64,000 nucleotides of DNA from positions 1-64,000 of the forward strand of contig ADNK01001884.1 of the NCBI GenBank assembly GCA_000320545.1. The letters are read 5' to 3'. This DNA is from Bigelowiella natans CCMP2755 (taxonomy: Eukaryota > Protista > Cercozoa). The translations under genes and the position numbers were made by a program. Shown here piece by piece: positions 15,600 through 61,197 of this stretch (the stretch's first letter is position 1; each line of letters opens with the position of its first letter). Under the pieces are notes generated by a model. That model saw nothing but the letters and a program-made list of their open reading frames with translations. It ran no database searches and was not told where the DNA came from.

Positions 15600-16035
15600 C
15601 TGTGCGCGCGCGCGCAATATGCAGTAGCGCTATGTGTGTACAGCGCTAGCTAACATGTTGAATCTGTTGGTCCATGCTCCGCTATGTGTGCAATTTGTGC
15701 TACATGTGCATGTGTTCTGTGTGATCGTGAGCAATGATGAACACGTGCACACAACACCGGCTAGCTAGCTAGCTAGCCGGACATCTACATGGGCCATGCT
15801 AGCATGATCGACATAGACACAGAAATGCCACATGTCATTGCACATTGCATGCTACATGTGTGTGCATGCGTAGCTATGCGAACTCTTGCACACATGCACC
15901 GTGCGAACAGTGCGCAGCTATGTGATCGATCATGCATGTGCGATGCTGCTGTGCTACGTACACGACAGCACACATTTTTTTGTGTGTTCCATCGATCGCA
16001 TGCACATGCACATGCATGCATGAATGCACTAACCC
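15600..16035. other. TpA-depleted, CATG/TGCA-rich intergenic tract flanking LINE copy 1
   Basis: Dense catg/tgca/caca; residual TA mostly CTA/TAG; (CTAG)n at about 15761-15776. Confidence 0.85.
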
Positions 16036-17938
16036 TAACACCCCTCTCAACGGGAGAACGATTTCTCTCCTACAAATGGCTTCAAAAATGGAAGACAAAC
16101 TAACAGAACAACGGCTCCGCGAAGCTGTGCCCCCCAAAAACATTGGCATGCATCAGCATGCATTCATGAAAAATCGATCCTGCGAAACTGCACTCACAAA
16201 GATGACGCAGTCAATCGAGGATGGAGTGTGCAACAAAAAGCTTGCAGCCATCCTGTTGTTCACAGATGCCTCTGAAGCTCATCCAAAAGCCTGGCATTCC
16301 GGCATGACACGCAAGTTGCATGACAAACACGGAATGCGAGGCTCGCTGTTGCTGTGGATCGACGACTGGCTCAGAGATCGCACCGCCAGATTCAGATTTG
16401 GCAATGCTCTCTCTGAGCACATGAACCTTGGGAGCGGCGTCCCCGAAGGATCATCTCTCAGCTGTTTCCTTTTCATGACCTGTTGCGACATTTGCGAACG
16501 TGTTGCCAACACAGATTTCCAAACGTGCTGTGACGACGTTGCCCCCTGCAAATTGTTTTCGCCAAACCGATGGGGGAAAATGCAAGATGACATCCAGGCC
16601 GACCTGAACCAAATGACGGACTGGTGCATGAAATGGCGGATGCGATTCAATGGGGACAAGAGCGGGCACCTTGCAATTGACAAAAGAAACAAAGCCCACC
16701 GACACCAAACCTCCTGGAACATCTCTCTCAATCTCCAAGGAAAAATGAAAAGAGTCGACAGCGGCAGATGTCTCGGACTGATCTTCGACAACAAATTGAC
16801 CTTTGAAAAACATGCTCTTGCTTCTCACCTGAGATTGCAAAAGAAGCGAAGGTTTTTGTTGAGGTTGTGTCATTCCAGACACCTTGTGCCGCTGAATGTC
16901 AGACTGAAATTTTGCAAATCATGGTTCCTTGCATCCAGCAGACACGCTGCTCCAATGTGGAGATCACGAAGAAACATGCGAATGAAACAGATGGATTCCA
17001 TGGAATCCCAAACCCTGAAACGCACATTGGGATCACCTGGATCCATCTCCAACGACGTCCCCCACGTCCTCACTGGCACGTTGCCACCCCGACATCAAAC
17101 TGAAGTGCAGTGTGCCAAATCATGGTTGCGCACTGACGCATGGATCGACACAGGCAGCGGTCCTCAAATCCATGAGGGAACAAATGATTGGAGCAGTTGT
17201 GGCTTCATCATTGAAAATCGAAAAATGTCAGATGGCACATCGTGGATTGATGTGCCCACACACACGTGGAACAAAGCATCCTTGTTTCGACGGCTCAAAT
17301 CGATCACTGACGACTTGTTAGGTGACGAATTGCCCACCGTTTTGGCGACAACAGAGGCGCTGAAAAAAGAACTGAAAAAACATCACAAGGTGATGAAGTC
17401 TTGTGCTTTCAACGAATTCGAAGAGGAATGATCCAATGATTCATTGCGCGCTGTGCATCTCAAGAATCTTGGTTTCCTCCCGTCATCTTCGATCACCGGC
17501 ATCAAACTGAAACTTCCAAGTGTTGCTACATCATGGATGCGCGCCATCTGTGGTGTCGGCAATCTTGGCAAATTCATGCTGTCACGTGGACAATGCACAG
17601 AGGAAGATGCCACGTGCGATGCATGTGGCATCCTGAAGGACATGGATCATCTCCTGCAATGTCCAACACATGGTCGAGAACAAATCAGATTGCGCAATCA
17701 AATGCGCGCGATCATGAATCGCAACGACGACACGAACCGGTTGACAAAGGCTGAAATTGAATCCAGAACTGCTGCGCGCAGTGCGCGGCAACATCGGTCG
17801 CATGAGGACGCTTTCAAATGCATGAAACACATTGTGGCAGAAACCAACAGATGCAACATTAGCGCTGTAGCCGCTGCATTGCACAGCTACATCAGGATGA
17901 CCATTGAAAAAATTTAATTCTTCATCACATCCGTCTCA
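16036..17938 (+). mobile_element. Non-LTR retrotransposon (LINE) copy 1, 5'-truncated, hypermutated pseudogene
   Basis: RT motifs RTISLL, GSGVPEGS, CCDD (for YxDD), RCLGLIFDNKLTF, C-terminal CxxC..H..C knuckle; about 96% identical without indels to 33588-35490; premature TGA at 17429-17431. Confidence 0.95.
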
Positions 17939-18148
17939 TATGTATGAATAGCTAGATGCCCACTCTAGCACTGCTACCTAGCAGCTAGGAACATCTTGCA
18001 TAACGTACATGGCACGTACACGTCGTGACTAGCCCAGGATTGGACAATCCAAAAACAAATATGTGCAGCAGAGCGGGTAGTAGCTAGTAACGCAGTGCGT
18101 GAGCGTCGCTCACAGCATAGCTGTAACGCGTTGCACTAGTGTTCTTAG

Positions 18149-18184
<36 letters not shown>

Positions 18185-18317
18185 GATTACTCTGTGTTAC
18201 AGTAACACACCAAAAAAACTGCCAAGTTGTATAGGCTTACAAATATACACCATATACACACAAAATATGCCATACGCACATATAATATGTTTATATAAAT
18301 AATATATAATTATGTGT

Positions 18318-18377
<60 letters not shown>

Positions 18378-18378
18378 A
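18149..18378. repeat. Intact (TA)n and (TG)n microsatellites in AT-rich DNA
   Basis: Perfect TA runs near 18151-18181 and 18322-18360 followed by a TG run. Confidence 0.9.
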
Positions 18379-18910
18379 TATACTATTACTATTTTTTTAT
18401 TCTAGACATGAGTGTTGTCTGTTGTGTGTGTGTGTGTGTGTACGTGTAAGGGGGAGAAGAGAGAAAGAGAGAGAGAGAGAAGTAGGGGGGAGGGGGAGGA
18501 AAAAGGGAACTAAGAAGAAGAAAAGAGAGGAATTTGTGTGTGTGTGCATATGGTTCATTGCATATAACAGAAAATTATACAAAAAATACAATGAATAGCA
18601 ATTTGGATCAATAAATATGTGAATGTTATGTCTGTGTAATCTATACAGAGATAATTCTGAACTGCTACTCGATAAGGCTGGAGCAAAATAACTATCCCAC
18701 CCCGTATGACATATAAATTTTAAAAAATCTAAATGTGTATAAGGGGGAGGTGAGAGAATGTGCAGTGGCAAACATATATTATTGAGAATAGTATGAAGGT
18801 AGTAAATACAAACATGCCATGTCTGATCATCTTTGTGTGACTTCAGCTCAATTTGTTAAAGTAAAACTTATCATGCGCATCATTGTCGACTAATTATCAT
18901 CTGAGATAAT

Positions 18911-19439
18911 TTACTTCGAAGCAGGCTTCCTAGAAGGGGCAGTAATATCTGTACGAACAGGGAAAATAGAATCAGGCATATTATCGGGAAATTTTTTTGA
19001 ATACATTCATTATATTACTTTCGCGGAATCCGTTCTTGAAACGGCGAGGGATGTGCTTCATGTACTTCATACGCCCTGTTCCAACCGTTCTACGGCGCTT
19101 AGCCTTGTTAGCCCAGTTGACTAAAATTTAGAGATGTGATTATTGGGTAAGAAATATAATGTAAATATATAAGAGTAGCATTTAACATTTTTTATCTCGC
19201 TTGAAATTAATCCTTGGACTTACATCGGCGCATCTTCTTGCCAGGGTAACCACATGAGGAGCAGACCCCCTTCTGGATGTGGAAGGACGACTTTCCGCAC
19301 CGGCGGCAAAGTGTGTGAGATTTGTCGTTACGAGTTCCGGTACGACCAACACCTTTTGTCTGTAAAAGAAAACGATTTAGCGCATAGTAGGTACGAGAAG
19401 ACGATGCACGGTAGGGAGGGGGCGCAGGTGGCTCACCAT
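18911..19439 (-). CDS. RPL37: 60S ribosomal protein L37 (eL37), 4 exons, 92 aa
   Basis: Exons 19437-19439, 19224-19359, 19019-19120, 18911-18948 splice to MTKG...[25 protein letters not shown]...[12 protein letters not shown]...RRFKNGFRE; not present in the ORF track. Confidence 0.97.
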
Positions 19440-20049
19440 GGCGGATTCGGAGTTAGACCTCGGCGAATTTCAGCCGAATTAATAATTCTATAAAATTTAG
19501 TATACTGCCAAAAACGATCCTTATTACTTCATAACGACAAAAAATATTGCTCTTCAGATAGATTTTAATATTTGGAAGGCACTTTGTGATAGTTCTAACC
19601 TTATTTTGTTGTCGTCATGGGAAAAATAAGTGGAAGACAGATTCAGCTTGTATCTCTCGGGACTCTCCGGAACCTTCGGCATATCGGAGATATGACTCCC
19701 AAAGTTATTTATTGACTTTTTATGAGAGATCCGATGTAAAATAGAGTGTAATTTATCACAATTTTCATGGTCTCTGTCTAATAATGCATGAATTATCATT
19801 TTGTATTCTATTGAAATTTGAAAACTATATCTTAGAATCAGTCGGCTTGACCAAATGGCGCCGGCAGGATTTTTACCCCCCCACATAACAAGGGGTACAT
19901 ATTGTGAGCCATCGATTTGTGGATGGAAAGATTATTTCCTTCAAAAAATAACTGTTCAATGAGATCGTAGATTGCGAGGAGAGAAAAGAGTGAGGTATTT
20001 TGTTGTCTCTCATTCCAGTTCTTTGTTTGAATTGTTCGCTCCTCAGGGA

Positions 20050-22662
20050 ATGGTTAGGTTGAAACCTATCCGTTACCGTCTCTACCTGTTGACAACCATC
20101 TCGTTGGTTTCCTGGGCTGTTTTATGGGCAACGATATCACATCCCACAGCCAGAGGACAGGGTCTTGCTTCGACCTTACAGAGGCTGCGCGGCGAGAGAG
20201 ACAAGGCAGCAAAGCCTAACCAAAGGATAAATGCTCCACCACCTCGCACGGACATCCTTCAGACGATGATTCGAGCGGCAAAAGCAGGCGATTCATCAGC
20301 ACAGGTGCAGATGGCGAAGACTTACCAGAAGGGACTTCACGGCATTAAACCGAACCCTGAGGAGGCTTTCAAGTGGTACAAGGCTGCTGCTGTGGCGAGC
20401 AACAAGGAAGCCTTGCGAGAGGTAAGCTCTTGTCTGTTCCAGGGTATCGGAATCCGGAAAAATGCCACGCAGGCTGTGCAGTGGTGAGACAAGTTCTCTA
20501 CACATACCATGAAAAAAAAAAGGACGAAAGGAAAAGGAATGGTTTTGTTTTCACGCAACCGTTCCTTGCTTATCTCTTTAGGTTGCGAGCGGCAGCCAGA
20601 CGGGGTGAGGTACAGGCAATGACTCAATTGGCCCTTATGATTCAGGTTGTAAACCCTTGTCTCTCGTAACAACAACTGCTGCAAAGGATGTGGTGTTGTG
20701 CATACATGTAATTGCCTCTCCTTCGATTTGTCGATCAGAACAAGAGCGTCGTTGCTGAAGGAGGACCATGGGAGTGCCAGATGCTCCTTGCTCACGCCGC
20801 TGAGGCTGGATTTGCCATGGCAATGCGCGAGTGAGTAATGCCGCACTTTATGCTGCTACTGCTTTCATTTTCCTTTGGGGACAAAAGCTTGGCTAACCGT
20901 CTTTAAACATTTTAACCAAAAAGGTACGGCAAGTTGCGGCTGGAAGGAGGGTTCGTGGATGAGGGCATTTCTTGGTGGGATTATTAACATTAACATTAAC
21001 ACCTGCAACATAAGTTTCCACGGCTGCATCGTTCCCTTCCTAATCCTCTGTTGTCCGACCGTCTACCACTACTACTACTCTACTACACAAACATTATAGG
21101 TTACTCAAGGCAGCAACAAGAGACGACCCTCCAGCCTGTATGGAAATAGCGAGGGCGTATCAACTTGGACTAGGAGTTCCTATGGATCCGCAACGAGTAG
21201 TACACCAACACTTTTTTTTCTTGCGATCTCAAGCTCTCAGCACATCACGAGTATCTCTAAAGCTCCCAATTATCTTTCTATCTCTCTCTCTCTCTCTCTC
21301 TGGTACCTCTTCAATGTTCTCAGGCTGTGCGCTACTATACCGCAGCAGCGAACAAGGTGGTGTGAAGAGCTTGATTCATTCTCATATCATTCGCATCCTA
21401 CTCTTCCTTTCTCTCATTCCCAAACCAACGCCACGTGTCTAAGCGATGTGTCAAAACATGCGCGCAGGGCATCGAGGCAGCCGTCGTTGCGCTCGGGGAC
21501 ATGTTCCACCACGGCCATGCTGGTAAGAGGACGCCATCACCCTCAACCGTCGTCATCACGCATTCTCTACACGCATGCACGCTCACACCCATAAACGCAC
21601 AGGAGGTGCTGTCGGCGTAGACCTCCGGCAAGCAATCTACTGGTACACTCGAGCTGCAGAGGAGGTGAGCGTTCAGGGTGGAGCGTAGTTTAGGGGGGGG
21701 GGGGGGGAGGGGGGATGCCGCGCAATGTGATGGCAGTATTTAACGCAAACGCGGCGCTCTGAGCAGATTCCTGGGAGGAATGTTTCCGTGGGATGTTTCT
21801 CAACGCTGAATCGATTTTGTAGAGATATATTGCGCTCGGTGTAGCCATCGTTATAACCAAAATTATCCTCTCTTATCAGCACCAGCACACTGAAAGCATG
21901 TTCCGCCTTGGTGGCTTCTATGAGCGTGGTCGCGAGCTAGGTGAAAATAACCACCATCCATACACCTACCGCGTGTGGGTAGAGGAGGGGGTGGGGGCTG
22001 AGGCAACGGGGACACAGATAGTTCTTGTTAAGTGGTGAAAGACAATTAGCGCAGAGCCAATCATCACGTCAGGCCGTCATCGTTGTCGTCGTCATCACCG
22101 CCGCCCCCCCCCCCACACAATGATCGGAATCGTCATATTTCGTTGTCTAATCGTCAGAGGGAAGCCCGGTGGAGCGAGATCTCGGCAAGGCCAATATGTA
22201 CTACACGAGGGCAGCGCAACTGCGGTAGTAGTATTCGCATTTTAAGAAAATAGAAATTACGTCGAGATGGATCCCTCTCTCTGGCGTTCTTTGTGATCCC
22301 CTCCTTTCCCCCACCCCTCGTCCTCGGCACACAGGTCCTCAGACGCGCAGGAGGCGCTGGCACGACTACATACCAAAGGTAGTATCGACTGCCCTCCCCT
22401 CCCTCTCGGCAATACTGATGAAGGTTTTTCCGGCCGAGCAGTAGTGCCATGAGCTCACAACTGCGCATGATGATTTCTTTCGAATCGGAAGCAAATATCC
22501 TGGGTCCTTACCCTCTTTCTATGGGTCTGATATGGTGCTGAACACACCTGGCTCTTTAAATTTGCAAGAGAAAGGGGATCACTTGTTGGTCACCAGGCTT
22601 GATTTTAGCTGTTTATTGAAGCTCTCCATGCTTTAACGAACCGTTCCTCGAGCACATAGCCA

Positions 22663-22697
<35 letters not shown>

Positions 22698-23863
22698 TTT
22701 CCCAATCTACTGAGTATGAATTGATAGAGATATGTATATATTGTTGTGATGTGCGAGGATGATTGACGTCATCATCCTCCATCAATGCGATCCATTGTCC
22801 GTGCTCTTGGCATAAATCATCCTCATTCTAATACGACTACTACTCCTCCTCCTCCTCCTTACTACCACAACCACGCAGCTATATTCGAGAGTAAGCAGCC
22901 CCATCGCCAATTGGTGCTACGTTCCACGAGGTCAGCAGCAAAACTGGAAGAAAAGAAGAGCTATAATATACTGATTAGAAGTTGAAGCTATATTTTAACT
23001 GCTTCACGTGACCTTTCCAGCAGCAGCAGCAGCAGCACACGCATCATCGTCGTCATCATCATAATCATCATCATCATCATAACATATTAACAGGAGCATG
23101 CATGTCTGTGGGGAGATATACGGCATTCCCTGGCCGCTTCGAGTGCTGCTGGATACGGGTTCCGACTGCGACCTCATCAGCAAAGAGTGTGCGGAGAGGT
23201 AGCCAATGATGCTGAATTTCATGGATGATGACGATGATAATGACGACGAAAGATGGTGACGACGATGATGAAACTAAGTGCGCGGGTGATACGATTGCGC
23301 AGGCTGATGTTCTCCAACAAGCACCAGACGCCTCCCCCACTACAACTTAACCCTGCCGCGCGTTCTCGTTCAGTAGTCCCTGGCCTGAGGGTGCGCCTCA
23401 AGGGACTGAAAAAGACCCGCGAATTGAATGATATGGCGGGAACCGTTGTCGGCGCAGGACGCGGCTCTCCACAAAGATATCCTGTGGTGCGTGCGTACGC
23501 GTTCGATAAGAAGGAAGCAATCCTTTACACACGCGAGAACAGTAGTAGTAGTAGCAGCAGCAGCAGCAGCAGCAGCTCACAACACCGCCGCACCCCCATT
23601 CCCGCCATGACGATCATTATTGTCATCAATCGTGAAGGTGCTGGATTCTTCGAGCAGGATTGTGACTGTGAAAGAGTCCAACATGGTACTACTACTACTA
23701 CTACTACTACTACTTATTATGATAATAATACCACTAGCACACTTCTCCACAAGATCGGCATGCATCTGTCATGGGGATTGGTGGTTTTGGTGGTGGTACT
23801 GCTGCGAGCCTCTCCTCACTCACTCACTCACCCACTCACTCACTCGCTTACTCTGCTGCTGTT

Positions 23864-23919
<56 letters not shown>

Positions 23920-24858
23920 CTCAGGAATACGACTTGAAGAATCCAAACCCCCTCGCCACCATCGTTTGTCGTCACCCCGAACGGTAGCACATATCATCAT
24001 GTTCCAATCATGTTTCTCACATCCAAGCTAATCCTCTATCCTCTCATCTTCGCATTATTCACATTATTAACCTCGCCCCCCCCCCCCCCCCCTTCTCCCC
24101 TACATTCTGCCTTTGGCTTTTTCCAGGCATAGAGAGAGCGGAGAGGATTGCTGGATCGCTGCCTCTTCCTCTGCCCACCCCCACCGCCGCCTCCGCCGTG
24201 GAGATGATGGAGGAGGAGGTGCTGCGGACTTTTGCCACGTGGTGTATCCTCCGGGGCCTCGCTCAGGCAACGTCTGGCTTGTTGATAGTAAGTTGAGCTT
24301 TCTTGCCATTAATGGTGTATGAAAATGAGGATGGGAACGATGTGATTCATTGGGTGGGGAGAGATGTAGATGTAGATGTAGATGCCAACGAATGCGTATG
24401 ATGGGAACCCCAACACCAGCAGCTGATGGATGGTATTGTATTGCTATCTTCTTTGCCCGCAGACAACAGGATCAGATGCTTCTCCGGGTCCCCCCCCTCC
24501 TCCTCAAAAGACGGAGTGCGTATTGGAACGGCCATCGAGGCCAAGCTCTCCATCGGTACTGCGACTGCTATGCCCATCTCCATTGATGAAAGAACGATGA
24601 TGAAAGAACGATGATGACAATAATATAATCGTAACAATTGCGACAATCCTAGGGCCTGAGGACCGGTTCAGATTGCTCAGAGTGTACCCGGAGAAGCGCG
24701 ACCGCGTTGGTTGGGACATTCTCCTCGGAACAGACGGCATCGCCGACTTCAATCTTCGGCTCGAGCTGCATAAAAACGCGTCGTTCGTGAATGCGCTCCC
24801 GGCAGGCCCCCGGGGCAGGCACCACTGGGTTCTCCGTCCGCTTCAGAGAAACACGTAG
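20050..24858 (+). CDS. Signal/TM + Sel1-like repeats + retropepsin-like aspartic protease; many exons
   Basis: Sel1 repeats (AQVQMAKTYQKG..EEAFKWYKAAA; AVVALGDMFHHG); VLLDTGSDCDLIS near 23140-23180; DILLGTD near 24715. Confidence 0.75.
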
Positions 24859-25478
24859 CTGGCGCCGATCCAGGAAGGGAGATTATTAGTTTTTATCAAT
24901 GTTATTATTTAAGTTGAGTGGGGAATATTCTTAGCCATTTTTTCATTTTAACGCAGCAGCAGCAGCAGAGTAGCTGCAGCAGTAGTTCAGTTGTAGTAGT
25001 AGTAGTGGTAGTAGTTGTTGTAGTCTAGTAGTCCGTGGTAGTTGTAGTAGTAGCAGTTGTAGTAGTAGTAGTTGTAGTAACAGTTGCAGTGGTAGCAAAA
25101 TGCTAGAACACGTCCAAACGTACGTGTGAGTCGATAAGTATTTAGCTTACGCTTGTGAATTATTGCATATATCTAGATATGCACTTTACTTACGTGTAAA
25201 TTAGTGTATATATCTGGATATGCAACCCGTACATGCTAACATGTGCATGCAGCAATGTACGTCGAAATGTACAAATTTGATATTCAATCACGATAGTCGA
25301 ACACGATGCATTCATGCCAGCTCATCTAGTCATGCTTGTGCATGTGGGAAATTGTTATCAATGCGGATACTGCTAGCTAGCATGATATAGTTCATCTACG
25401 CGCCTCGTGTGTGCATGGATGGAAAGCTTGCATTCTAGCATTGCGTTGATTGCATCTGCGGTCTACATGAAGCGCTAG

Positions 25479-25569
25479 AGCGCTGTAGCCGCTGCTTTGC
25501 ATAGCTACACACAAGTTAGTTGGGATGACTATTAGAAAATTTTAATCACTTCATTACATTCGTCTTATA
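25479..25569 (+). mobile_element. LINE copy 3: short diverged 3'-terminal fragment
   Basis: agcgctgtagccgctgc..gctaca..ggatgac..cttcat..cgtct matches 17861-17940. Confidence 0.85.
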
Positions 25570-25920
25570 AATCGGCGCATAAGGCTGTAATATCTAGCTT
25601 GGCTAGGTCATGTCTAGCAATGTTACGTTATTAAGGGCTATGCAATTCTAGAATGCTAGAATGGCCTAGCTAGCTAGCAAAGTATGAAAGCATGCACATA
25701 ATAACTCATTAGTGTGTGCCAGCTAGCCAGGCTATAGCTTAATAGCAGGCCTGTCTAGCCGTAGTGGTAGCGTGAGTGTTCATTGCTAGATTGCAAGATA
25801 ACCGTCTTTGATAATGATGTTACGTTCTATTTCGAAGAGCCAGATTACTCACATGTACTACGATCACAGGCGTACATGTACACAGCAAACCCATTCCTGC
25901 ATTACCCACTGCAGAAAGGA

Positions 25921-26631
25921 TTATTGATTGAGAGTTTGAAGGCCGCGCTGAATGTCTGATGCTTCCGTAAACGTCAGCGTCGTTCCAAGGGGATTGTAGG
26001 TCGGAGTCGCCGCCACACATTCCCACCTAGATTGGAGTTATTATCAAGAAAACGATAAACTTTCGATAAGGGCCATGTAAGCAGAAACGAATAATATCTT
26101 TGAATCACTGATATCGCCAGAATGGTCGATTTAAAAAAAAAAACAATGGCGGATGCACGAAAGTAGAAAGCCTGAAAATTCAGATACATATGGCATCTCA
26201 GGGGAATACCTATCCGGAAGAAGCTTCTTCGCCTTTAGTCTTGTGACAGTTGTTGCATATGGATGACCGCCGTCCTGGAAGCAGGAAACACATCAATGTC
26301 GTACCAAAATTACAAATCACAACAATCACACTTTGATGGAGTGCTATTTGCTTAGGAGAGGTGGAAAGAACAGAATTAGCGCATCAGTCAACTGCTTCCT
26401 ACCTTGCAGATATCAGCGAAGAGAACAGCTTTCAGGTTGGGCATTAGCTAGGCGTTGGGGAGTTTGCAACGACAGAAAAGCAACAAAGTGTTCAGAGAAA
26501 GCAAATAGAATGCGGGGGACTAACAAACTATGTAGAAGAAGAAGAAGAAAACGAGAACAAGGAGGAGGAGGAGGAGGAGGAGGAGCAGAAGGAGGCATGG
26601 CGCATGAGGAATGAGGCGGGGTGATGCAGGA

Positions 26632-26670
<39 letters not shown>

Positions 26671-27088
26671 AGAATCAATCACCATCTCTAATTCCTGTGG
26701 AACATCGGAGAGCAGCGGAGTCTCGATCACATAGAAGGGCTCTCCATCTACATCGCCACCTAGCTGTAGCGCTTCTACCACCCCCGTTCCATAGGTGACA
26801 ACTGCTAGGGAATCAGGAGGCACATCCGACGACGCGATTCGCTTTCCGGAGGGGTCCCGCACAATCACGGACGAGAACGGCAGCCACTGCAGAGGACGGG
26901 AGGGATTGTAGAGAGGAGAGGAGGGCAGAGGAGCGACAGGAAAGAGGAAGAAGAGGTAAGTGAGTGAGAGGCACTGTGGTGTATGAATGATTGCTTCAAA
27001 CACGTACATCGTCTTCTGGGTAGTGGCAAATGAGTCCATTGTCCTTCTTCTCGAGGTCGATGTGACGTCGGTTCTGTGCGTCAAAAGC

Positions 27089-27126
<38 letters not shown>

Positions 27127-27388
27127 CGTAATGACGAACACACAGCATCAGGATCAATGTGCATGAAGAGAATCTCCAAATATTTAGGACGATGAGGTGA
27201 CTCATGCCAAATTAAAAAATCATATCCCTTGAGAGAGAGGGGGGGGGGGGAGGGGGAGAAATTTTCTCTATCGTGCTCAGAGAAATCCCAGGCTCATTCA
27301 AAAAAGATTTAAAAACTAGGAAGGAGCTCTTACCAGAAGATCTGTGCAGTCCACGCTCATAACAACCTACATACAACATGTATATAAG

Positions 27389-27425
<37 letters not shown>

Positions 27426-28011
27426 CGTTGCATTAAAAAAAGGCCCTGCTTTCTGTGGTTACCCGGCCGGCCTTTACTTGCTCCATCGCATAGCGCCATC
27501 CCCTGGCATAATCGCTTCCTGTTCGGAAAATGAAAATAAACCAATGAAGCAACGCGTTCCAGTTGTCACAGATCGCCATTCTCATCATCATCATTCTCAT
27601 CATCATCATTATCATCATATCTTTGTCATCATCATCGCGGTAGGCCAGCATGCTCGTCAGCGACCGTTCGAATAGCAGACAACGTCGATGCCTATATTGC
27701 CAAATAGAGATATGATGAGAGGAAGACAAGACAGGTACAGTTGTTTCTTTGAATCTCCCTCCCACCTGGAGGCATATGCAGTGAGTTGTGCGTGTGAAAA
27801 TTGCCACCGAACCGTCCGGGTCCAAAGCCCTGATCGAGGAGGAAATGAAGACGGAAAAGGAGAGGAGGAGGAGAAGGAGGGGGAGGGGGAGTGGTCATGT
27901 GCCAAAGGAAGGAGGAGAATACTGAGAAAATGCCTATATAATAAAGCACGTCATTTAACGCATTCCATGATATAATCATCACGATTCACCAACTTATAGG
28001 TTGAACAAGAC

Positions 28012-28052
<41 letters not shown>

Positions 28053-29041
28053 GCCAAAGCGAAGTGTTGATTTTGAACCCACCTGTAACCGAATCATCAT
28101 GCCATTTGGGCACGTGCCATTAGACAGCCAATACCTTTTATTTCGCAGTAATCGATTTGAAATACGCGCAACGCCCTCTTCGCATCCCCCCCCCCCTCCC
28201 TCGCCTTTATGCTATCTATCCAAGGAAGCGTGTATGTGTGCTCGCGCTTTGACTCACATGATCGCGGCCTCAAAGAACCTGAGGTTTTACAGATGGAATA
28301 TGAGCGAATCTACAAGAATCTGTGACGTCGTGGAATGTCAATCTGCTAGAGCGCTTTGGGTTGGCGACGTACATGTCAGCTCCGCAGTCGAGGTATTTCG
28401 CATATGGAATCTCCAGAATGGGTACTAATCCAACCTGTGCATTGGTACAATTACGACCTTATTACTCCTCCCGCCTGCATTTGCATTAGATTCGATTATC
28501 ATAACCCTTCCCCCTTCCCCCCCCACCCCTCCCCGCAATGTGAGTAACCTGAGCCAGGCCAATGGCAGCTCCAATCTGATAGCAAAAAACGTCACAAACC
28601 CACTCAAAGCACTGCACCAGCGGCCTGATTCTCGCATAATTTATTCATTTTACCAGAGATGTTTCATCAGGGGGAAAATCTTGCACGCGGTGAGGATAAC
28701 AGCTCGAGAGACCGTCCGTGACTTTGTAATACCTTGATGATAATTCCACAACAAAAGCAGCAGCACGGGATTTTAGCAGAGAGGAGGGCGTTTCCAAACA
28801 GCACTCCGCTATTATGTCAGGCAGTAGCTGTCGCTGGCACACGCACCCGCCATATCCTACATCTTCGCCGATGTATATCGTCTCTGGATTGCTGCAATGG
28901 ACGGTGGGTAGATAGGGAGGGAAATGACGAGAAGAAGAAAGTCAGCACAATGTCATAATGAGCACGTCATGCTAGCTTCGCCCTTCTTCCTCTCCTTATA
29001 AAGCGTAGCAGCAGGAGGAGGACGTTGCCGTGTTTGCGTCG

Positions 29042-29075
<34 letters not shown>

Positions 29076-29281
29076 ATGGGGAGTCATCGTACAGTGCAAG
29101 CGCCTCATCAATGGTAGCGTTCATTAGCTTCCGCATCACATCCCCCTGATCGTAAGTTGAGCTTATTGTTTTGTTTGTTCATTCAGCATCAGAAGAAGCA
29201 CCACACAACGCCACAGTGAAGAAAAACAACAATTTGCGGATAGGAGGCGAAATAATAAAGAAAGGAGAAAAATGCTAGATA

Positions 29282-29317
<36 letters not shown>

Positions 29318-30748
29318 AAGATGTCATATGAGTCGCTAGCACCCACTTTGCTGCCTATTTTGGCTCTAATTTTCGCCTCCTTCGCCTCATGTGGATAGAT
29401 GTGCTCGGCGGTTACAGGTACAAGCGGGGCGCTGCACGATTAGCAGCAGCAGAAAAGGGAGGAGGGGGAGGCAGTGAGAGGGGCCATGGTTGGGCGTGGT
29501 GAAGCTTAAAATTGGACAATTATTAAGAGGAGTGACCTGTTTGTCTGAACAAGGTACTTTCTATCCGTATTCTTATCTTCAGCCGACGCCTTATCGAAGG
29601 CCACTTTGGTCATCTCCATAATTTCAATATAGCGATCGTGCAGCTTCTCATATGTCGCCACTCCCTTGTGAGTGAGTAAGCAAGAGACACAAGAAGTAGC
29701 ATAGCAGCAGCACCGGCAGGCTTTTAGACGGTGAGAGATGTACGCGGTACACCGACATCAAAGACCGTGATAGATACGAAATATAAGGCAGCAAGTTGAT
29801 AAGAAGAGTGTGGAATCATCCATTTGTTTTTCTAAATTCTTGGAAGTGTTTTTCTCGAAACGCTGGCGATCGATCATGAGCGATGCCTCCGACTACTGCC
29901 TCACTTACCAATTGCGTCGCTTGAAAGCAGGCCCCTGCATAATAGAGAGAGGGGGAGAGAAAGGAATAGAGGAGAGCATACACAGAGACGATTAAGAGAT
30001 CAGGGCTAAAGGATGTTGTTATTTCTAGGATTACATCTCCATTACCAGCGATGACGTTGGCCTCCTGCTGCTTTGCGATCTCCGTCTTTGTCCTGTACTC
30101 CTCTTCCTGATGGTTATGCGTTGTGTTGGTGGCGACGATGATTCAGAGAGCACGCACATCGATGCCTCTGCGAAACGGTACGTCGGAGATGAGCGACGGT
30201 CTCTCAAGACTTCTTCTCGGAAAGGATTTGAAAAAACTGCTTTTGTTTTCCAATTATCGAGCATGATTACAATTCTGAACAATTGCATCTCTCTCCCAAT
30301 GTCTTATTCTCCCAATCTCCCCACCCCCCCCCATCCTGTGATTACTCTGTCGTTTCCAGAATGCGCAAACCGACGGGGAAGGTCTCTGTAGCTGTAGAGG
30401 TGCGGAGAGACACACAACAGTCAAGATCTCCGCAAGAGTGAATGTCATAATACAAACGCTAAATCGTCGCCATTATCATCGCCATTAGAGCCAAGAAGCA
30501 CGGCAATGAGAAGGGGGAAATTCAATTACACGATGAGCGCCGGCCGCTGTTTGTTTCTTACGTGCTCTGTGGCTTGCTGTGTGACCTTTAAGAACGATTG
30601 CGATAATGATGGTTGTGGTATTGGTTGGTGGGGGGGGAGGGGGGAGGGGCTGCGAGGCTGGAATTGAAACATAGTGATAGTTGATGTATATGGAGAAGAA
30701 AACGAAGAAGATGACGAAGACGATGAAGGAGGAGAGGAAACGAGTATG

Positions 30749-30809
<61 letters not shown>

Positions 30810-31571
30810 CTTGAAGATAGCACAGGCGTAATGTAACCACTACTTACTCTGTGCACGTCGAGAATGTTCAATCCGACCGCCTAGTTATTCATTATCAGCA
30901 GCGCAACAGCATCAGTAGCAACAGCGTCAATAATTCTGTGTCGCTCGTAGGGTTGCAGGCTATTATCCGCAATGGGCGACTTACAACCATTTTCTTCTGA
31001 TTGATCATCGGAACAGTGAGAAAATTAATTACACCTCGTACACTGGCATATGCAATCGTTTCAGGAAGTTTCCTAGCCAGCCAAAGCCTTCGAGTACAAT
31101 AATACAAACATCTTATCATCTAAATAACCTCCCCCCCCTCTATCCCTATATCACTTGCCTCAGGAGTAATGAAGGACACTTACCATGAAGGGAGATGCAG
31201 ATGTCATTATCTGAAACAGCGAAGAGAACGGGGCACTTGTATCTGTTCGACGTGTGCAATAGAAAGATGGCAGAGGAGTGGACCCAAGGTTAGAGCATTA
31301 GTGATATGTTTGGCATTGGCAGGGAATTTAAGAGGATGAAAGTTTCTACGACTTTCTCGCCTGAGCGTACTCCGCTGTGTTCATCGCCGACAAGAAATGA
31401 GCATTGTTGACGCTGCCGTCTCCAACCGACACGAAGGAAATAGCGTCTCGAGGAAATCTTGGCGATTTGGAGGCGGGGGGCGAGCTGGAGCTTGAAGAGC
31501 TTGAATCTAAAATGGTGTGGGAAAGAGCGAACCCTGCATACAAAGCATGTCATAAACTCAACCGGCTTTAC

Positions 31572-31606
<35 letters not shown>

Positions 31607-32797
31607 ATCATCACCCTCACCGCCACCATCGGCTTTGCTATCGTCATCGTCATCGTCTTGCCACTAACCGCAGTGTGTAAAAACGCACCTAGAGCTCTGC
31701 CTACGGCGGGAGGGCACTGTGACGCCAGCGTCGAGGTTACAACGAAATCGCTAGGACCGCCACCTAAACCATGATCAGGTGTTTGCTCAGCAGCAGTAGG
31801 CGTGCAAGGAGGAGCAGCAGCACAAGATACTACGCCGACGAAAAGACAACGCAAATGTGAAGGGGCTTCTGTCACCGATGGCACAATGGCGGCCGCTCGT
31901 AACGGGATCGTTCAGCGACACGGTATACCTAAGAACCAGAGAGAAAGGCCATCTCTCACTTCAATGATCGCTCGTCTATACATCAGCTTTTGATTCACCC
32001 TCTCGCTCTATCGAGGAGAACATCTTCCAGAGGCTTCCCGTCTCTCAGCTGCCGTGCTATTGCAACAGCTACGTGGCGGTAGTGGAGAGCTCCTGGATCT
32101 GAATCGCGAAGGACTAGGCCAGCTGGTGCCTGTTCAAAGCACAGTAATAAAGAAGAAGAAGATGAGGAAGAAGAAGAAGCAGTTTTCTCTAGAATAACGC
32201 GGATAGCACAACCAATAGCTCTTCTCCACAAGGACCGATTGTATAGAAACCCTGCGAGTAGAAAGTCATTAGCGTTGGGTGTGTTTCTTCCTCCACTCAC
32301 GTTGCTATTTTTGTGGTTGTGGGGCATTAAATGAACCTCTCCAAGAAGGGCTGCGATTCGGCTCTCCACGTGAAGGCAGCACGTTGCAAAGGCGGCATCA
32401 AGTGTAAGGAGGAACTGATCACTCGACATGCCAGACGCTTCAAGGCTAAGCGTCTCCACCTGCAAGAGCGACGACGACACGATGCCCATCATCCCGCATT
32501 CAAACTTATCACCCAAATGTAACAGTGCACCTGTGGATCCGGGGACCGTGGGGGCGATGCAAACGACTTAAAGAAAGCTGGAGGTGACGGACAATCTCCG
32601 GTTTTCAAACGCTCTACCAACCGTTTTTGCTGCACTATTTCGGGCAGCTCTTGGATTTTCTTCTCCATGCTAGCTCTCTTCTGAAGGTATCTGCTCGTCG
32701 ATAAACAGCAGCGATGGGACGAGGGGGAGGTGCGGAATAGCGAGGGCGCTATCCTCGCTGACCCACCCTCGCGAGAGATGCTTCTAAATCGATACAT
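25921..32797 (-). CDS. 2-oxoacid dehydrogenase E1, fused alpha+beta, likely mitochondrial; many exons
   Basis: LHYRH, STLASQCPPAVG, ThDP motif VGDGSVNN, DFPPDETSL, IPYAKYLDCGADM, VVTYGTGV, TPTYNPLG; Arg/Ser-rich presequence MYRFRSISR. Confidence 0.85.
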
Positions 32798-33587
32798 CAG
32801 CGGAGGAGGGGGAAAGCCGATGGAGGAGGAGGGAAGGAGCAGGGGTAGCGGATTTATCGTCGGGGAATAGAATATCAGGCTTTCTGGAGTACCCCACTTT
32901 CCGTCGTTACATAGGGTTTTCGTGCTGCGACTTACTTTTCGTTCATTTCTTAAAACAAATCGCCTGCGATTCGCTCTTTGCAAATGCAATATCCCCATGT
33001 TAGCACTAGGATACTGTCTGCTGGAGCAATGCCTCAAACCCTGCATTCAACAGCGTCCAATGGCCTTCGAAATGACTCTTCACGTTTCACTTGATTAATG
33101 CAGTAACCGCATGAACCATGATATCACCTCATTGGGCTCTTTCGAGTGTCATTCAGTATCATTATTCCCCTAGAAGCACCGAATAAATATTCATCGTATT
33201 CGCCGGGTATCAATCAAGGAGGGAGGAGCAGTTCGGGCACACTTCACTCTCCGCTTAGAAGTGGCGAGAACATTGTTTTGTGAATTGCGACGGGTAAATT
33301 TTAGATAGTTTTTTGCTCTCGCATATTTTTCCGCCTCCTAAATACCCACGATGTTCAACATGAACAATGCCCTGAGACTGTAGTAATTCTCTCTTCGCTT
33401 CAAAAAACTAGTTGTGTCTTTGCATGCTACTACTTGTCGATGTATAGATGTAATCTTTAAGTAAACACTTCAGTAATGAAATAGCCCCAAAGTAAAATAG
33501 TTCTAGATCTATATAGATATGACATTAGTATGCGCCTAGCGATGATAGACATGCAATACATTATATTTATAATATATATATATATAT

Positions 33588-35593
33588 GAGACGGATGTGA
33601 TGAAGAATCAAATTTTTTCAATGGTCATCCTGATGTAGCTGTGCAATGCAGCGGCTACAGCGCTAATGTTGCATCTGTTGGTTTCTGCCACAATGTGTTT
33701 CATGCATTTGAAAGCGTCCTCATGCGACCGATGTTGCCGCGCACTGCGCGCAGCAGTTCTGGATTCAATTTCAGCCTTTGTCAACCGGTTCGTGTCGTCG
33801 TTGCGATTCATGATCGCGCGCATTTGATTGCGCAATCTGATTTGTTCTCGACCATGCATTGGACATTCCAGGAGATGATCCATGTCCTTCAGGATGCCAC
33901 ATGCATCGCACGTGGCATCTTCCTCTGTGCATTGTCCACGTGACAGCATGAATTTGCCAAGATTGCCGACACCACAGATGGCGCGCATCCATGATGTAGC
34001 AACACTTGGAAGTTTCAGTTTGATGCCGGTGATCGAAGATGACGGGAGGAAACCAAGATTCTTGAGATGCACAGCGCGCAATGAATCATTGGACCATTCC
34101 TCTTCGAATTCGTTGAAAGCACAAGATTTCATCACCTTGTGATGTTTTTTCAGTTCTTTTTTCAGCGCCTCTGTTGTCGCCAAAACGGTGGGCAATTCGT
34201 CACCTAACAAGTCGTCAGTGATCGATTTGAGCCGTCGAAACAAGGATGCTTTGTTCCACGTGTGTGTGGCCACATCAATCCACGATGTGCCATCCAACAT
34301 TTTTCGATTTTCAATGATGAAGCCATAACTGCTCCAATCATTTATTCCCTCATGGATTTGAGGACCGCTGCCTGTGTCGATCCATGCGTTAGTGCGTAAC
34401 CATGATTTAGCACACTGCACTTTAGTTTGATATCGGGGTGGCAACGTGCCAGTGAGGACGTGGGGGACGTCGTTGGAGATGGATCCAGGCAATCCCAATA
34501 TACGTTTCAGGGTTTGGGATTCCATGGAATCCATCTGTTTTATTCGTATGTTTCTTCGTGATCTCCATATTGGAGCAGCGTATCTGCTGGATGCAAGGAA
34601 CCATGATTTGTAAAATTTCAGTCTGACGTTTAGCGGTACAAGGTGTCTGGAATAACACAACCTTAACAAAAACCTTCGCTTCTTTTGCAATCTCAGGTGA
34701 GAAGCAAGAGCATGTTTTTCAAAGGTTAATTTGTTGTCGAAGATTAGTCCGAGACATCTGCCGCTGTCGACTCTTTTTATTTTTCCTTGGAGATTGAGAG
34801 AGATGTTCCAGGAGGTTTGGTGTCGGTGGGCTTTATTTCTTTTGTCAATTATAAGGTACCCGCTCTTGTCCCCATTGAATCGCATCCGCCATTTCATGCA
34901 CCAGTCCGTCATTTGGTTTAGGTCGGCCTGGATATCATCTTGCATTTTCCCCCATCGGTTTGGCGAAAACAATTTGTAGGGGGTAACGTCGTCACAGTAT
35001 ATTTGGAAATCTGTGTTGGTAATATGTTCGTAAATGTCGTAATAGGTTATGAAAAGGAAACAGCTGAGAGATGATCCTTCGGGGACGCCGCTCCCAAGGT
35101 TCATGTGCTCAGAGAGAGTATTGCCAAATCTGAATCTGGCGGTACGATCTCTGAGCCAGTCGTCGATCCACAGCAATAGCGAGCCTCGTATTCCGTATTT
35201 GTCATGTAACTTGCGTATCATGCCGGAATGCCAGGCTTTTGGATAAGCTTTAGAGGCATCTGTAAACAACAGGATGGCTGCAAGCTTTTTGTTATATACT
35301 CCATCCTCGATTGACTGCGTCATCTTTGTGAGTGCAGTTTCGCAGGATCGATTTTTCATGAATGCATACTGATGTATGCTAATGTTTTTGGGGGGTATAG
35401 CTTCGCGGAGCCGTTGTTCTATTAGTTTGTCTTCTATTTTTGAAGCTATTTGTAGGAGAGAAATCGTTCTCCCGTTGAGAGGGGTGTTAAGTTCTTTGTT
35501 GGCCTTAGGGATGAGACAAAAAATGGCCGCCTTACGTGAGCCATCTCGGGTACCCCATCTATATGACATGTTGAATGTAGCTAACCACAGTTG
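33588..35593 (-). mobile_element. Non-LTR retrotransposon (LINE) copy 2, 5'-truncated, RT frame still open, flanked by (TA)n
   Basis: 653-aa ORF 33608-35569 with LIPK..RTISLL, HQYAF, KAY, GVPEGS, YCDD and CCHC-type tail; no endonuclease domain; TA runs at 33572-33587 and 35594-35620. Confidence 0.96.
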
Positions 35594-35624
<31 letters not shown>

Positions 35625-36093: not shown

Positions 36094-36136
<43 letters not shown>

Positions 36137-37148: not shown

Positions 37149-37180
<32 letters not shown>

Positions 37181-40753: not shown

Positions 40754-40797
<44 letters not shown>

Positions 40798-43473: not shown

Positions 43474-43854
43474 TTGTCACCGCGGATTTGTGATTTCACT
43501 CTGCCCTCACATCAAGTCGCACATGAAGAACTTCATGTTTTAACAGTCGTAGTATCAAAAATTCGCCGGCTAGATGCTAGATGGTTTAACCATTTTCGCC
43601 AAGGAAGCAGTTTGATTTTGGAAATGTGAACAAAATGCCCTCCTTTCCTTGCGAAAACCCGACGAATGGAGGAAAACAAAACATCTCCGATCGGTGAAGC
43701 AACATGATGCGAACCATGAGAAGTTACGTTGAAACCAAACTAGGAAGCGACATGAGGATTGACATTGGATCAAAATTCGACCCGCTTTTTCATATTTTTG
43801 GGTCGATTTTTTGCGGTTAATTTTTCAAATCCAATCAGTCCTCACTGAAGCTAG

Positions 43855-44720: not shown

Positions 44721-44727
44721 AAGTGTA

Positions 44728-44905
44728 AGTTCCACTCCGTTTCCTTTCCCCCCCTCTGCTTCGGCATCTTCCAAACCAGGATTTCGTATCAAGGAAACCA
44801 ACTCGCTCGTGATGTGGAGCCAAGTTCCACCCCATTTCCTTTTTTCCCCTCTGCTTTGACATCTTCCAAACCAGGATTTCGTATCAATTCGCGCGTGATA
44901 TGGAG
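44728..44905. repeat. Imperfect tandem duplication, 95-bp offset, at gene 3' end
   Basis: catcttccaaaccaggatttcgtatcaa occurs twice (ccaaa at 44771 and 44866). Confidence 0.9.

Positions 44906-47797: not shown

Positions 47798-47841
<44 letters not shown>

Positions 47842-61127: not shown

Positions 61128-61197
<70 letters not shown>

What the first reader, a model, noticed from the sequence alone, without database searches (positions are those of the whole stretch)
16036..35593. Reverse-RIP: directional TpA to TpG/CpA (A-to-G, both strands) hypermutation of a retrotransposon
Seen: manual alignment of LINE copy 1 (16036-17938,+) with copy 2 (33588-35490,-) gives about 72 substitutions and no indels; about 59 fall in TpA of copy 2 that is TG, CA or CG in copy 1; only about 6 are not directly at TA or TG/CA-switch sites. 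Copy 1 has no TpA from 16103 to 17318 (about 1.2 kb). Polarity from established RT motifs: copy 2 keeps canonical Tyr (HQYAF, KAY, ITYYD, YCDD, FYKS, RYAAPIW) where copy 1 has His/Cys (HQHAF, EAH, MTCCD, CCDD, FCKS, RHAAPMW); also dozens of CA/TG-to-TA changes would be expected to put stops in copy 2, whose frame is open. So TA is ancestral, the opposite of fungal RIP and of 5mC decay. Inference: a genome-defence mutator acting on adenine in TpA, e.g. a TadA/ADAR-like deaminase on DNA or mutagenic processing of modified A. I know of no characterised system of this kind, but cannot search.
Basis: partly seen in the sequence, partly recalled or inferred. Interest (0 to 1): 0.97.

Follow-up and report, generated by a model that had tools for sequence, protein, structure and literature searches.

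The report
TpA-targeted hypermutation of a LINE copy
In one of two sister retrotransposon copies in this alga's genome, nearly every TA dinucleotide has been rewritten to TG or CA; the A:T-to-G:C mutator is real and unusual, but a 2026 preprint already reported it for this species (Bigelowiella natans).

Summary
Copy 1 (16036-17945,+) and copy 2 (33580-35489,-) align without gaps and differ at 73 positions. Sixty-seven of these are TpA conversions. In copy 1, 58 of 59 TpA between element positions 42 and 1163 became TG (38), CA (19) or CG (1).

The direction is TA to TG/CA:
- Outgroup copies from metagenomes agree with copy 2 at 47 sites and with copy 1 at 12.
- The RT profile scores copy 2 higher.
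- The opposite (RIP) direction would be expected to add about 6.7 stops to copy 2's open frame (P = 0.0002).

The host is Bigelowiella natans or a very close relative. Mettrop et al. (bioRxiv 2026) already showed, in mutation-accumulation lines of this species, locus-restricted hypermutation exclusively at TpA (to TpG/CpA). Their low-TpA gene list contains three gene models of this LINE family. The enzyme remains unproven.

What this window adds:
- The two copies are independent insertions. One is saturated and the other, 15.6 kb away, is almost spared, so this is not RIP-like homology targeting.
- The two strands are hit in random interleaving.
- The CTA/TAG context is relatively resistant.
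- Older hits shared by both copies are mostly synonymous.
- An uncultured relative shows the same signature.

The parts
16036..17945 (+). Copy 1: a 5'-truncated LINE (RT domain, C-terminal region and 3' UTR). This is the hypermutated copy. TpA O/E is 0.09.
16077..17230 (.). The saturated conversion tract in copy 1. 58 of 59 TpA were converted: 38 to TG, 19 to CA, 1 to CG. The TpA-free stretch is 16103-17318.
17429..17431 (+). In-frame stop in copy 1 (TGG to TGA). This is an ordinary G-to-A change outside the tract.
33580..35590 (-). Copy 2: an independent insertion of the same LINE lineage, about 100 bp longer at its 5' end. Its frame is open. It has 61 TpA in the region where copy 1 has 3, and only about 4 conversions of its own.
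33666..34289 (-). The 3' third of the element (positions 1201-1824), which is TpA-poor in both copies. The equivalent stretch in copy 1 is 17236-17859. These are older conversions inherited from the common source.
35595..35620 (.). Intact (TA)13 abutting the 5' end of copy 2. Together with the (TA)n tail at about 33560-33586, it suggests the element inserted into a (TA)n microsatellite.
15999..16022 (.). Twelve in-phase CA/TG units, 13 bp upstream of copy 1, in the position where copy 2 has (TA)13. This may be a converted (TA)12. The evidence is only suggestive.
15600..16035 (.). Upstream flank of copy 1. TG+CA is 24-30 per 100 bp, and 19 of 22 remaining TpA are in CTA/TAG context. This may be an extension of the tract beyond the LINE, but (GCTA)n-like flank sequence is a confounder.
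43751..44750 (.). A second candidate hypermutated tract of unknown origin. Rho_TpA is 0.32 and Rho_CpA+TpG is 1.68. 12 of 18 residual TpA are in CTA/TAG context.

Best explanation
Copy 1 is a dead, 5'-truncated LINE insertion. After integration it was hit by the locus-restricted DNA hypermutation process of Bigelowiella natans, which changes A:T to G:C only at 5'-TpA-3'. Either strand of the palindromic TpA can be hit, giving TG or CA. After one hit, neither strand still carries TpA, so the site becomes immune. This explains the near absence of TA-to-CG double changes. Repeated hits run to saturation across the targeted domain (at least 16077-17230, possibly about 15600-18100). TpA in CTA/TAG context is converted more slowly and survives longest.

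Steps shown here: the direction, the dinucleotide specificity, use of both strands, saturation, restriction to one locus, and the absence of selective filtering in copy 1.

Steps inferred:
- That the chemistry is enzymatic deamination of adenine to hypoxanthine in DNA by a TadA/ADAT-type deaminase (my estimate is about 0.5).
- That targeting follows a locus property such as chromatin or transcription state, not sequence homology.
For: Specificity and saturation: 67 of 73 differences are TpA conversions, and 58 of 59 TpA in the tract are converted.

Direction:
- The outgroup agrees with copy 2 at 47 sites and with copy 1 at 12.
- Copy 1 keeps 0 of 88 outgroup TA sites in the 5' 1.2 kb; copy 2 keeps 36.
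- RVT_1 scores 65.3 against 52.8 bits.
- The RIP direction would add a mean of 6.7 stops, with P(none) = 0.0002.

A DNA-level, two-strand process: TG and CA outcomes are randomly interleaved (runs test z = 0.8), with only one CG double.

The changes fell on a dead copy: copy-1-only conversions are 10 synonymous and 25 nonsynonymous, while older shared ones are 50 and 16 (Fisher p = 6e-6).

Locus targeting, not homology targeting: the copies are independent insertions with different 5' ends, they differ by only about 0.3% outside TpA, and copy 2 is almost spared.

Same organism and same process:
- Bigna1 gene models are the closest named relatives.
- Mettrop et al. found 230 of 231 de novo mutations in two hypermutable regions to be A-to-G or T-to-C at TpA, at about 1000 times the baseline rate.
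- Their Table S8 lists models 84287, 77403 and 78558 of this LINE family.

Rate check (my inference from their numbers): about 1e-5 per TpA per generation would saturate a tract in about 4e5 generations. The six background differences imply a few million generations.

CTA/TAG resistance: all 7 retained TpA in copy 1 have this context, against 15 of 58 converted ones (p = 2e-4). In my hand tally of their Table S2, TAG accounts for 20 of 206 events.
Against: - No raw reads or population data were available for this locus.
- The window's identity as B. natans rests on 96-97% identity to a paralogous gene model and on a masked self-hit, not on a mapped coordinate.
- The evidence that the tract extends into the flanks is confounded. 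(GCTA)n/CTAG-rich flanks also occur next to a relative in a metagenome. The CA/TG mosaic is partly periodic, so slippage could have produced it.
- Nothing here identifies the enzyme. Because TpA is self-complementary, sequence alone cannot tell whether A or T is the base attacked.
- The 2:1 bias toward sense-strand A-to-G (p = 0.016) is unexplained.
Confidence: 0.85

Rival explanations
1. RNA-level editing. The LINE transcript that gave rise to copy 1 was edited A-to-I at UpA by an ADAR- or ADAT-like RNA deaminase, and reverse transcription fixed the changes in the new insertion.
For: The element replicates through RNA. TadA/ADAT enzymes naturally act on A preceded by U, and ADARs favour a 5' U (established knowledge; also discussed in the preprint). 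The two copies are independent insertions, so the changes could in principle predate integration.
Against: Editing of the sense RNA gives only A-to-G on the sense strand. Here 19 T-to-C changes are randomly interleaved with 38 A-to-G changes. The requirement for a 5' T is almost absolute, and a 3' G is disfavoured, unlike ADAR. The same signature arises de novo in integrated DNA-virus regions, one of them transcriptionally silent, without retrotransposition. The flank of copy 1 may also be affected.
Confidence: 0.05
2. The same DNA-level process, but the base attacked is the thymine of TpA and not the adenine. Examples would be enzymatic modification of T (5hmU or base-J-type hydroxylation) or a lesion that pairs with G, giving T-to-C.
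For: TpA is self-complementary. 'A-to-G after T' and 'T-to-C before A' describe the same event seen from opposite strands, so all sequence data here and in the preprint fit either reading. Some protists modify T in preferred dinucleotide contexts (own knowledge, not tested).
Against: There is no evidence for such a base in chlorarachniophytes. Adenine deamination has direct precedents: the T/U(-1) preference of TadA/ADAT enzymes, and amphioxus ADAT2 deaminating DNA (PMC10354150). B. natans has an ADAT2 homologue.
Confidence: 0.12
3. Classical RIP-like or 5mC-type C-to-T mutation. Copy 1 is the original state and copy 2 gained TpA from CpA/TpG.
For: The CpA/TpG-to-TpA axis is the dinucleotide axis of Neurospora RIP. 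The 3' third of both copies is TpA-poor, which at first sight suggests a TpA-poor ancestor.
Against: Outgroups carry TA at 47 of 62 informative sites. Copy 1 would need to have had no TpA in 1.2 kb while its relatives have O/E of about 0.8. 57 such changes would leave the frame open with P = 0.0002. Copy 2 keeps the canonical RT residues and scores 12.5 bits higher. CpG O/E of 0.87 argues against heavy 5mC decay.
Confidence: 0.01
4. No special mutator: the pattern comes from ordinary divergence, selection against TpA, gene conversion from a TpA-poor paralogue, or an assembly artefact.
For: TpA is mildly under-represented genome-wide (O/E 0.75). TpA-poor paralogues exist.
Against: Differences outside TpA amount to only about 0.3%. 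Gene conversion would import differences that are not at TpA. The conversions destroy catalytic residues and are mostly nonsynonymous. Independent gene models and an independent experiment show the same signature.
Confidence: 0.02

Closest known systems
TpA hypermutation of integrated viral DNA in Bigelowiella natans (Mettrop et al., bioRxiv 10.64898/2026.01.13.699255)
   Same: Same organism (or a very close relative). The same exclusive TpA-to-TpG/CpA signature on both strands, with local restriction and action on foreign or mobile DNA. Their low-TpA/high-CpA+TpG transcript list (Table S8) includes three gene models of this LINE family, and their low-TpA CDS set is enriched for RT and endonuclease-RT Pfam domains.
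   Different: They measured de novo mutations in a 186-kb NCLDV insert and a 25-kb virophage insert, far from saturation. Here the target is a 1.9-kb LINE insertion taken to saturation, with a spared sister copy as an internal control. The main text does not mention retrotransposon copies, trinucleotide context or flanks.
Repeat-induced point mutation (RIP) of ascomycete fungi
   Same: Dense, transition-only, dinucleotide-specific hypermutation that inactivates a mobile element. It acts on the same CpA/TpG-TpA axis and on both strands.
   Different: The direction is opposite: RIP is C-to-T and creates TpA and stop codons. RIP requires duplication and usually hits both copies. Here one of two 96%-identical copies is spared, and the preprint's main target is single-copy.
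ADAR hyper-editing of viral or retroelement RNA fixed by reverse transcription; APOBEC3 editing of retroelement cDNA
   Same: Deaminase-type clustered transitions in retroelements, interpreted as defence. ADAR favours a 5' U.
   Different: Those processes are coordinated on one strand and have looser context. ADAR accepts a 5' A and favours a 3' G. APOBEC changes C, not A. Here both strands are interleaved, a 5' T is almost obligatory, and a 3' G is disfavoured.
TadA/ADAT2-ADAT3 tRNA adenosine deaminases, including amphioxus BjADAT2 acting on DNA (PMC10354150) and fungal sexual-stage A-to-I mRNA editing
   Same: They act on A preceded by U/T. There is a precedent for DNA substrates. The preprint reports a B. 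natans ADAT2 homologue (Bn78255).
   Different: No enzyme was tested. To my knowledge, fungal mRNA editing readily edits UAG, whereas TAG is the poorest context here. The link is a lead, not a demonstrated membership.

Membership tests
B. natans TpA hypermutation (Mettrop et al. 2026) | Mutations are almost exclusively A-to-G / T-to-C. | tested here: met
   Polarised with the outgroup, 44 or more of the copy-1-derived changes are A-to-G or T-to-C. 67 of 73 differences lie on this axis.
B. natans TpA hypermutation (Mettrop et al. 2026) | Restricted to TpA dinucleotides, giving TpG or CpA. | tested here: met
   59 TpA sites are converted. Only 2 A-to-G changes fall outside TpA (element positions 490 and 1363).
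B. natans TpA hypermutation (Mettrop et al. 2026) | Occurs in the B. natans nuclear genome. | tested here: inconclusive
   The closest named proteins are Bigna1 models, one at 96-97% identity. The neighbouring host gene is a masked self-hit. The window could not be mapped to a scaffold.
B. natans TpA hypermutation (Mettrop et al. 2026) | Locally restricted, and affects foreign or mobile DNA. | tested here: met
   The TpA void is confined to about 16.0-17.9 kb of the 64-kb window, on a LINE.
B. natans TpA hypermutation (Mettrop et al. 2026) | Arises de novo at about 1e-7 to 1e-6 per site per generation. | not testable with these tools
   This needs mutation-accumulation or strain resequencing at this locus.
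Fungal RIP | C-to-T at CpA, creating TpA and stop codons. | tested here: not met
   The direction is TA to CA/TG.
Fungal RIP | Triggered by duplication, with both copies mutated. | tested here: not met
   Copy 2 keeps 61 TpA where copy 1 keeps 3. The preprint's main target is single-copy.
ADAR-type RNA hyper-editing fixed by retrotransposition | Changes on one strand only (sense-strand A-to-G). | tested here: not met
   38 TG and 19 CA outcomes, randomly interleaved (runs test z = 0.8).
ADAR-type RNA hyper-editing fixed by retrotransposition | 5' neighbour U or A; 3' G favoured. | tested here: not met
   The 5' T is almost obligatory. G at +1 occurs in 4 of 57 edited contexts. TAG accounts for 20 of 206 events in the MA data.
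5mC deamination decay (CpG to TpG/CpA) | The ancestral dinucleotide is CpG. | tested here: not met
   The outgroup has TA, not CG, at these sites. Window CpG O/E is 0.87.
TadA/ADAT-type DNA adenine deaminase as the agent | An identified deaminase acts on TpA in DNA. | not testable with these tools
   No candidate gene lies in the window. The preprint names Bn78255 and Bn77986 but did not test them.

The most novel reading that the evidence does not exclude
The mutator is a DNA adenine deaminase system addressed to loci rather than to sequence homology, and it prefers TAH (H = any base but G). It marks individual insertions, LINEs as well as viral DNA, and erodes every accessible TpA in domains from about 2 kb to about 200 kb. 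It also operates in uncultured relatives. Resident LINE lineages respond by losing TpA at synonymous sites, which would be a mutational arms race between host and transposon.
Probability: 0.3. Interest if true: 0.75.

Novelty: already known. Interest (0 to 1): 0.5.

Why it matters
A eukaryotic defence that rewrites A:T to G:C at a defined dinucleotide in DNA would be a new class of genome-defence mutator. It would mirror RIP and APOBEC, and it could be a natural source of DNA adenine editors. That discovery belongs to the 2026 preprint.

This window gives independent, sequence-only confirmation on a different kind of target, a LINE. It also adds constraints that a mechanism must satisfy:
- Conversion reaches saturation.
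- Each TpA is hit once, on either strand.
- A 96%-identical sister copy 15.6 kb away is spared.
- TAG/CTA is a poor substrate.
- An active LINE lineage bears selectively filtered traces of earlier hits.

Tried and rejected
The register was corrected with a self-BLAST.
- The classical RIP direction was tested and rejected.
- RNA editing was considered and rejected on strand interleaving.
- I took the CTA/TAG-only TpA in copy 1's flanks as evidence that the tract extends beyond the LINE. I then found that (GCTA)n/CTAG-rich flanks also border a relative in a metagenome, so I downgraded this to suggestive. The CA/TG mosaic upstream of copy 1 is partly periodic, so it too is only suggestive.
- I tried to show long-term TpA loss in the LINE lineage against the environmental clade (69 of 137 TA lost against 8 of 245 gained). 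The third lineage, L006, shares CA/TG at 45 of those sites, so the polarity is ambiguous. Only the excess of discordant CA-versus-TG sites (10 of 45 against 5 of 113) supports parallel loss.
- The metagenome scan returned a single locus.
- Pfam found nothing on most neighbouring ORFs.
- Rfam and tRNA scans found nothing.
- Comparing P0002/P0003 with L006 at the protein level gave only weak support for further converted copies.
- I did not build, save or print any consensus or ancestral sequence. Majority states of the outgroup copies were used site by site, for counting only.
- The window is not human (CpG O/E 0.87, chlorarachniophyte gene models).
Full report
**1. The observation**

A self-BLAST of the window gives the true match: 16036-17945 (+) against 35489-33580 (-). 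It spans 1910 bp at 96.2% identity, with 73 mismatches and no gaps.

The differences, written as copy 1 base / copy 2 base, are G/A 42, C/T 23, A/G 5, C/G 2 and T/C 1. They break down as follows:
- 59 TpA of copy 2 are TG, CA or (once) CG in copy 1.
- Three further sites have CA in copy 1 and TG in copy 2.
- Copy 2's stop codon is TGA where copy 1 and the outgroup have TAA.
- Only six differences have nothing to do with TpA.

Copy 1 has 11 TpA and copy 2 has 69. Copy 1 has none between 16103 and 17318. Window-wide TpA O/E is 0.75 and CpG O/E is 0.87, and no other part of the window approaches this void.

**2. What the two copies are**

Both encode the RT and C-terminal part of a LINE ORF2 (Pfam RVT_1). 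Full-length relatives from Tara and other marine metagenomes (L002-L004) carry ORF1 plus an ORF2 with endonuclease and RT domains.

A full-length relative aligns to copy 2 up to about 35590, roughly 100 nt beyond the point where the copy 1/copy 2 similarity ends. The two copies therefore have different 5' truncation points. They are independent insertions from a recent common source, not a segmental duplication.

The family ends in a (TA)n tail. Copy 2 lies between an intact (TA)13 (35595-35620) and its own tail, which suggests insertion into a (TA)n microsatellite. Copy 2's frame is open. Copy 1 has a single stop (17429-17431), caused by an ordinary G-to-A change.

**3. Direction of change**

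Four tests agree that TA is ancestral.
- At the 62 differing sites covered by the outgroup copy L001, the outgroup agrees with copy 2 at 47, with copy 1 at 12, and with neither at 3. At element position 999/1000 the outgroup has TA, copy 1 has CA and copy 2 has TG.
- With five outgroup copies, there are 88 outgroup TA sites in the first 1.2 kb. Copy 2 keeps 36 of them and copy 1 keeps none.
- The RVT_1 profile scores copy 2 at 65.3 bits and copy 1 at 52.8 bits over the same residues. Relatives carry Tyr, Lys and Ile where copy 2 does.
- If copy 1 were ancestral, placing 57 CA/TG-to-TA changes at random would add a mean of 6.7 stops. The frame stays open in 0.02% of trials.

TA-to-TG/CA changes cannot create stop codons, which explains why both frames stay largely open.

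**4. Anatomy of the event**

- *Saturation.* Between element positions 42 and 1163, 58 of 59 TpA are converted: 38 to TG, 19 to CA and 1 to CG.
- *Strand use.* TG and CA outcomes are randomly interleaved (runs test z = 0.8), with a 2:1 excess of sense-strand A-to-G (p = 0.016).
- *One hit per site.* The near absence of CG doubles fits a rule that a TpA, once hit on either strand, is no longer a substrate on either.
- *Context.* All 7 TpA that survive in copy 1 are in CTA/TAG context, against 15 of the 58 converted ones (Fisher p = 2e-4). All five TpA left in the shared TpA-poor 3' third have that context too.
- *No selective filtering.* Copy-1-only conversions are 10 synonymous and 25 nonsynonymous, so they fell on a dead copy. 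Older conversions shared by both copies are 50 synonymous and 16 nonsynonymous (p = 6e-6). Those older hits were filtered by selection in a lineage that was still active. This also explains why the less constrained 3' third is TpA-poor in both copies.

**5. Extent of the tract**

Upstream of copy 1 (15600-16035), TG+CA reaches 24-30 per 100 bp, and 19 of 22 remaining TpA are in CTA/TAG context, against 38% in the rest of the window (p = 4.5e-6). A run of 12 in-phase CA/TG units (15999-16022) sits where copy 2 has (TA)13. Four of the window's eight such mosaics lie within 330 bp of copy 1, against 0.44 expected for the whole window.

This suggests the targeted domain is wider than the LINE. I treat it as suggestive only. 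CTAG-rich (GCTA)n sequence also flanks a relative in a metagenome, and the mosaic is partly periodic.

**6. Identity of the process**

The closest named proteins are Bigelowiella natans (Bigna1) gene models, one of them 96-97% identical to the 3' part of both copies.

A full-text search found Mettrop et al., bioRxiv 10.64898/2026.01.13.699255. Their findings from B. natans mutation-accumulation lines:
- 231 of 302 nuclear mutations fell in an integrated NCLDV region and a virophage region.
- 230 of those were A-to-G or T-to-C, and essentially all were at TpA (giving TpG or CpA).
- The rate was about 1000 times the baseline, and the process was seen only in some lines.
- TpA-depleted CDS are enriched for RT, endonuclease-RT and DDE domains.
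- They propose DNA adenine deamination by an ADAT2 homologue (Bn78255), which they did not test.

Their Table S8 lists transcripts in both the lowest 5% for TpA and the highest 5% for CpA+TpG. It contains models 84287, 77403 and 78558, the three Bigna1 members of this LINE family. Apart from that preprint, my searches for this dinucleotide signature in transposable elements returned only papers on classical fungal RIP, and the ADAT2 search returned enzyme papers, not another such mutator.

**7. Consistency with the measured rates (inference)**

Their 211 mutations in 3,132 line-generations, over 6,169 TpA, give about 1e-5 per TpA per generation. At that rate, 98% conversion takes about 4e5 generations. 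The six unrelated differences between the copies, at the baseline rate of 3.5e-10, imply a few million generations. A burst is not required. What is required is that copy 2's locus was targeted at least about 100 times less.

My hand tally of their Table S2 for scaffold 10, expressed on the edited-A strand, gives TAT 67, TAA 67, TAC 52 and TAG 20. This fits the relative resistance of CTA/TAG seen here. The split of 3 TAG against 17 CTA events is unexplained.

**8. Mechanism**

The best-supported reading is a DNA-level mutator that is restricted to particular loci and acts at TpA on both strands.
- RNA editing followed by retrotransposition is excluded by the interleaved strands, and by the preprint's evidence from integrated DNA viruses.
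- Homology-triggered (RIP-like) targeting is unlikely, because a 96%-identical sister copy 15.6 kb away is almost untouched and the preprint's main target is single-copy.
- Adenine deamination by a TadA/ADAT-type enzyme is plausible. Those enzymes act on A preceded by U/T, and amphioxus ADAT2 deaminates DNA (PMC10354150). It remains unproven.
- Because TpA is self-complementary, chemistry directed at thymine cannot be excluded from sequence alone.

**9. Beyond this genome**

L006 is a contig from a metagenome carrying a different subfamily, close to Bigna1 models P0002 and P0003. Its ORF is intact, and TpA O/E over its 3' kilobase is 0.06-0.36. The Tara copies have ordinary TpA (O/E about 0.8).

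With L006 as a third lineage, the polarity of the long-term difference is ambiguous at 45 sites. An excess of discordant CA-versus-TG states (10 of 45, against 5 of 113 at control sites) indicates that at least some TpA loss occurred in parallel in both lineages.

**10. Verdict**

Novelty is "already known" (a 2026 preprint), with the enzyme and the targeting signal still open.

The window is not human.

Noticed in passing
window 43751-44750: A second stretch meets the preprint's criteria for hypermutated DNA (Rho_TpA 0.32, Rho_CpA+TpG 1.68). It has 18 TpA per kb, and 12 of the 18 are in CTA/TAG context. Its origin is unknown, and nearby ORFs have no Pfam hit.
   Followed up: partly
window 15999-16022, 35595-35620 and 33560-33586: The LINE family has a (TA)n tail and appears to insert into (TA)n microsatellites. 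Copy 2 is bracketed by TA repeats. Copy 1 has a 12-unit CA/TG mosaic where a (TA)n would be expected.
   Followed up: partly
L006:2251-3250 (MDTE01204107.1): A LINE of a sister subfamily, from a metagenome, has an intact ORF that is nearly free of TpA over its 3' kilobase. Its 3' flank is rich in (GCTA)n/CTAG. This suggests the same mutator acts in uncultured relatives.
   Followed up: partly
L001-L005 (Tara and ENA metagenome scaffolds): Environmental copies of the family are 98-99% identical to each other. They are full length (ORF1 plus an EN-RT ORF2), 37% GC, with normal TpA (O/E about 0.8). This looks like a recently active family in a wild host that lacks the signature.
   Followed up: partly
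preprint Table S2: Among the de novo mutations on scaffold 10, A-to-G at TAG occurs 3 times, but the complementary class, T-to-C at CTA, occurs 17 times. I cannot explain this strand asymmetry.
   Followed up: no
window 18151-18360, 29287-29314, 30755-30782, 36098-36133, 40758-40789, 41695-41716, 47799-47838, 61135-61164: There are many intact (TA)11-20 microsatellites across the window. TpA-rich DNA is therefore not attacked everywhere, which argues for targeting by locus.
   Followed up: no
window 36343-38358(-), 19972-20487(+), 38597-40681(-): Host-like ORFs: an Abhydrolase_3 protein (the window's own gene model, P0033) immediately next to the spared copy 2, a Sel1-repeat ORF, and a 694-aa ORF with no Pfam match.
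   Followed up: partly
copy 1 tract, 16077-17230: Sense-strand A-to-G outnumbers T-to-C by 38 to 19 (p = 0.016). The older shared conversions show the reverse (CA more common than TG), largely because T-to-C at third codon positions is synonymous.
   Followed up: partly
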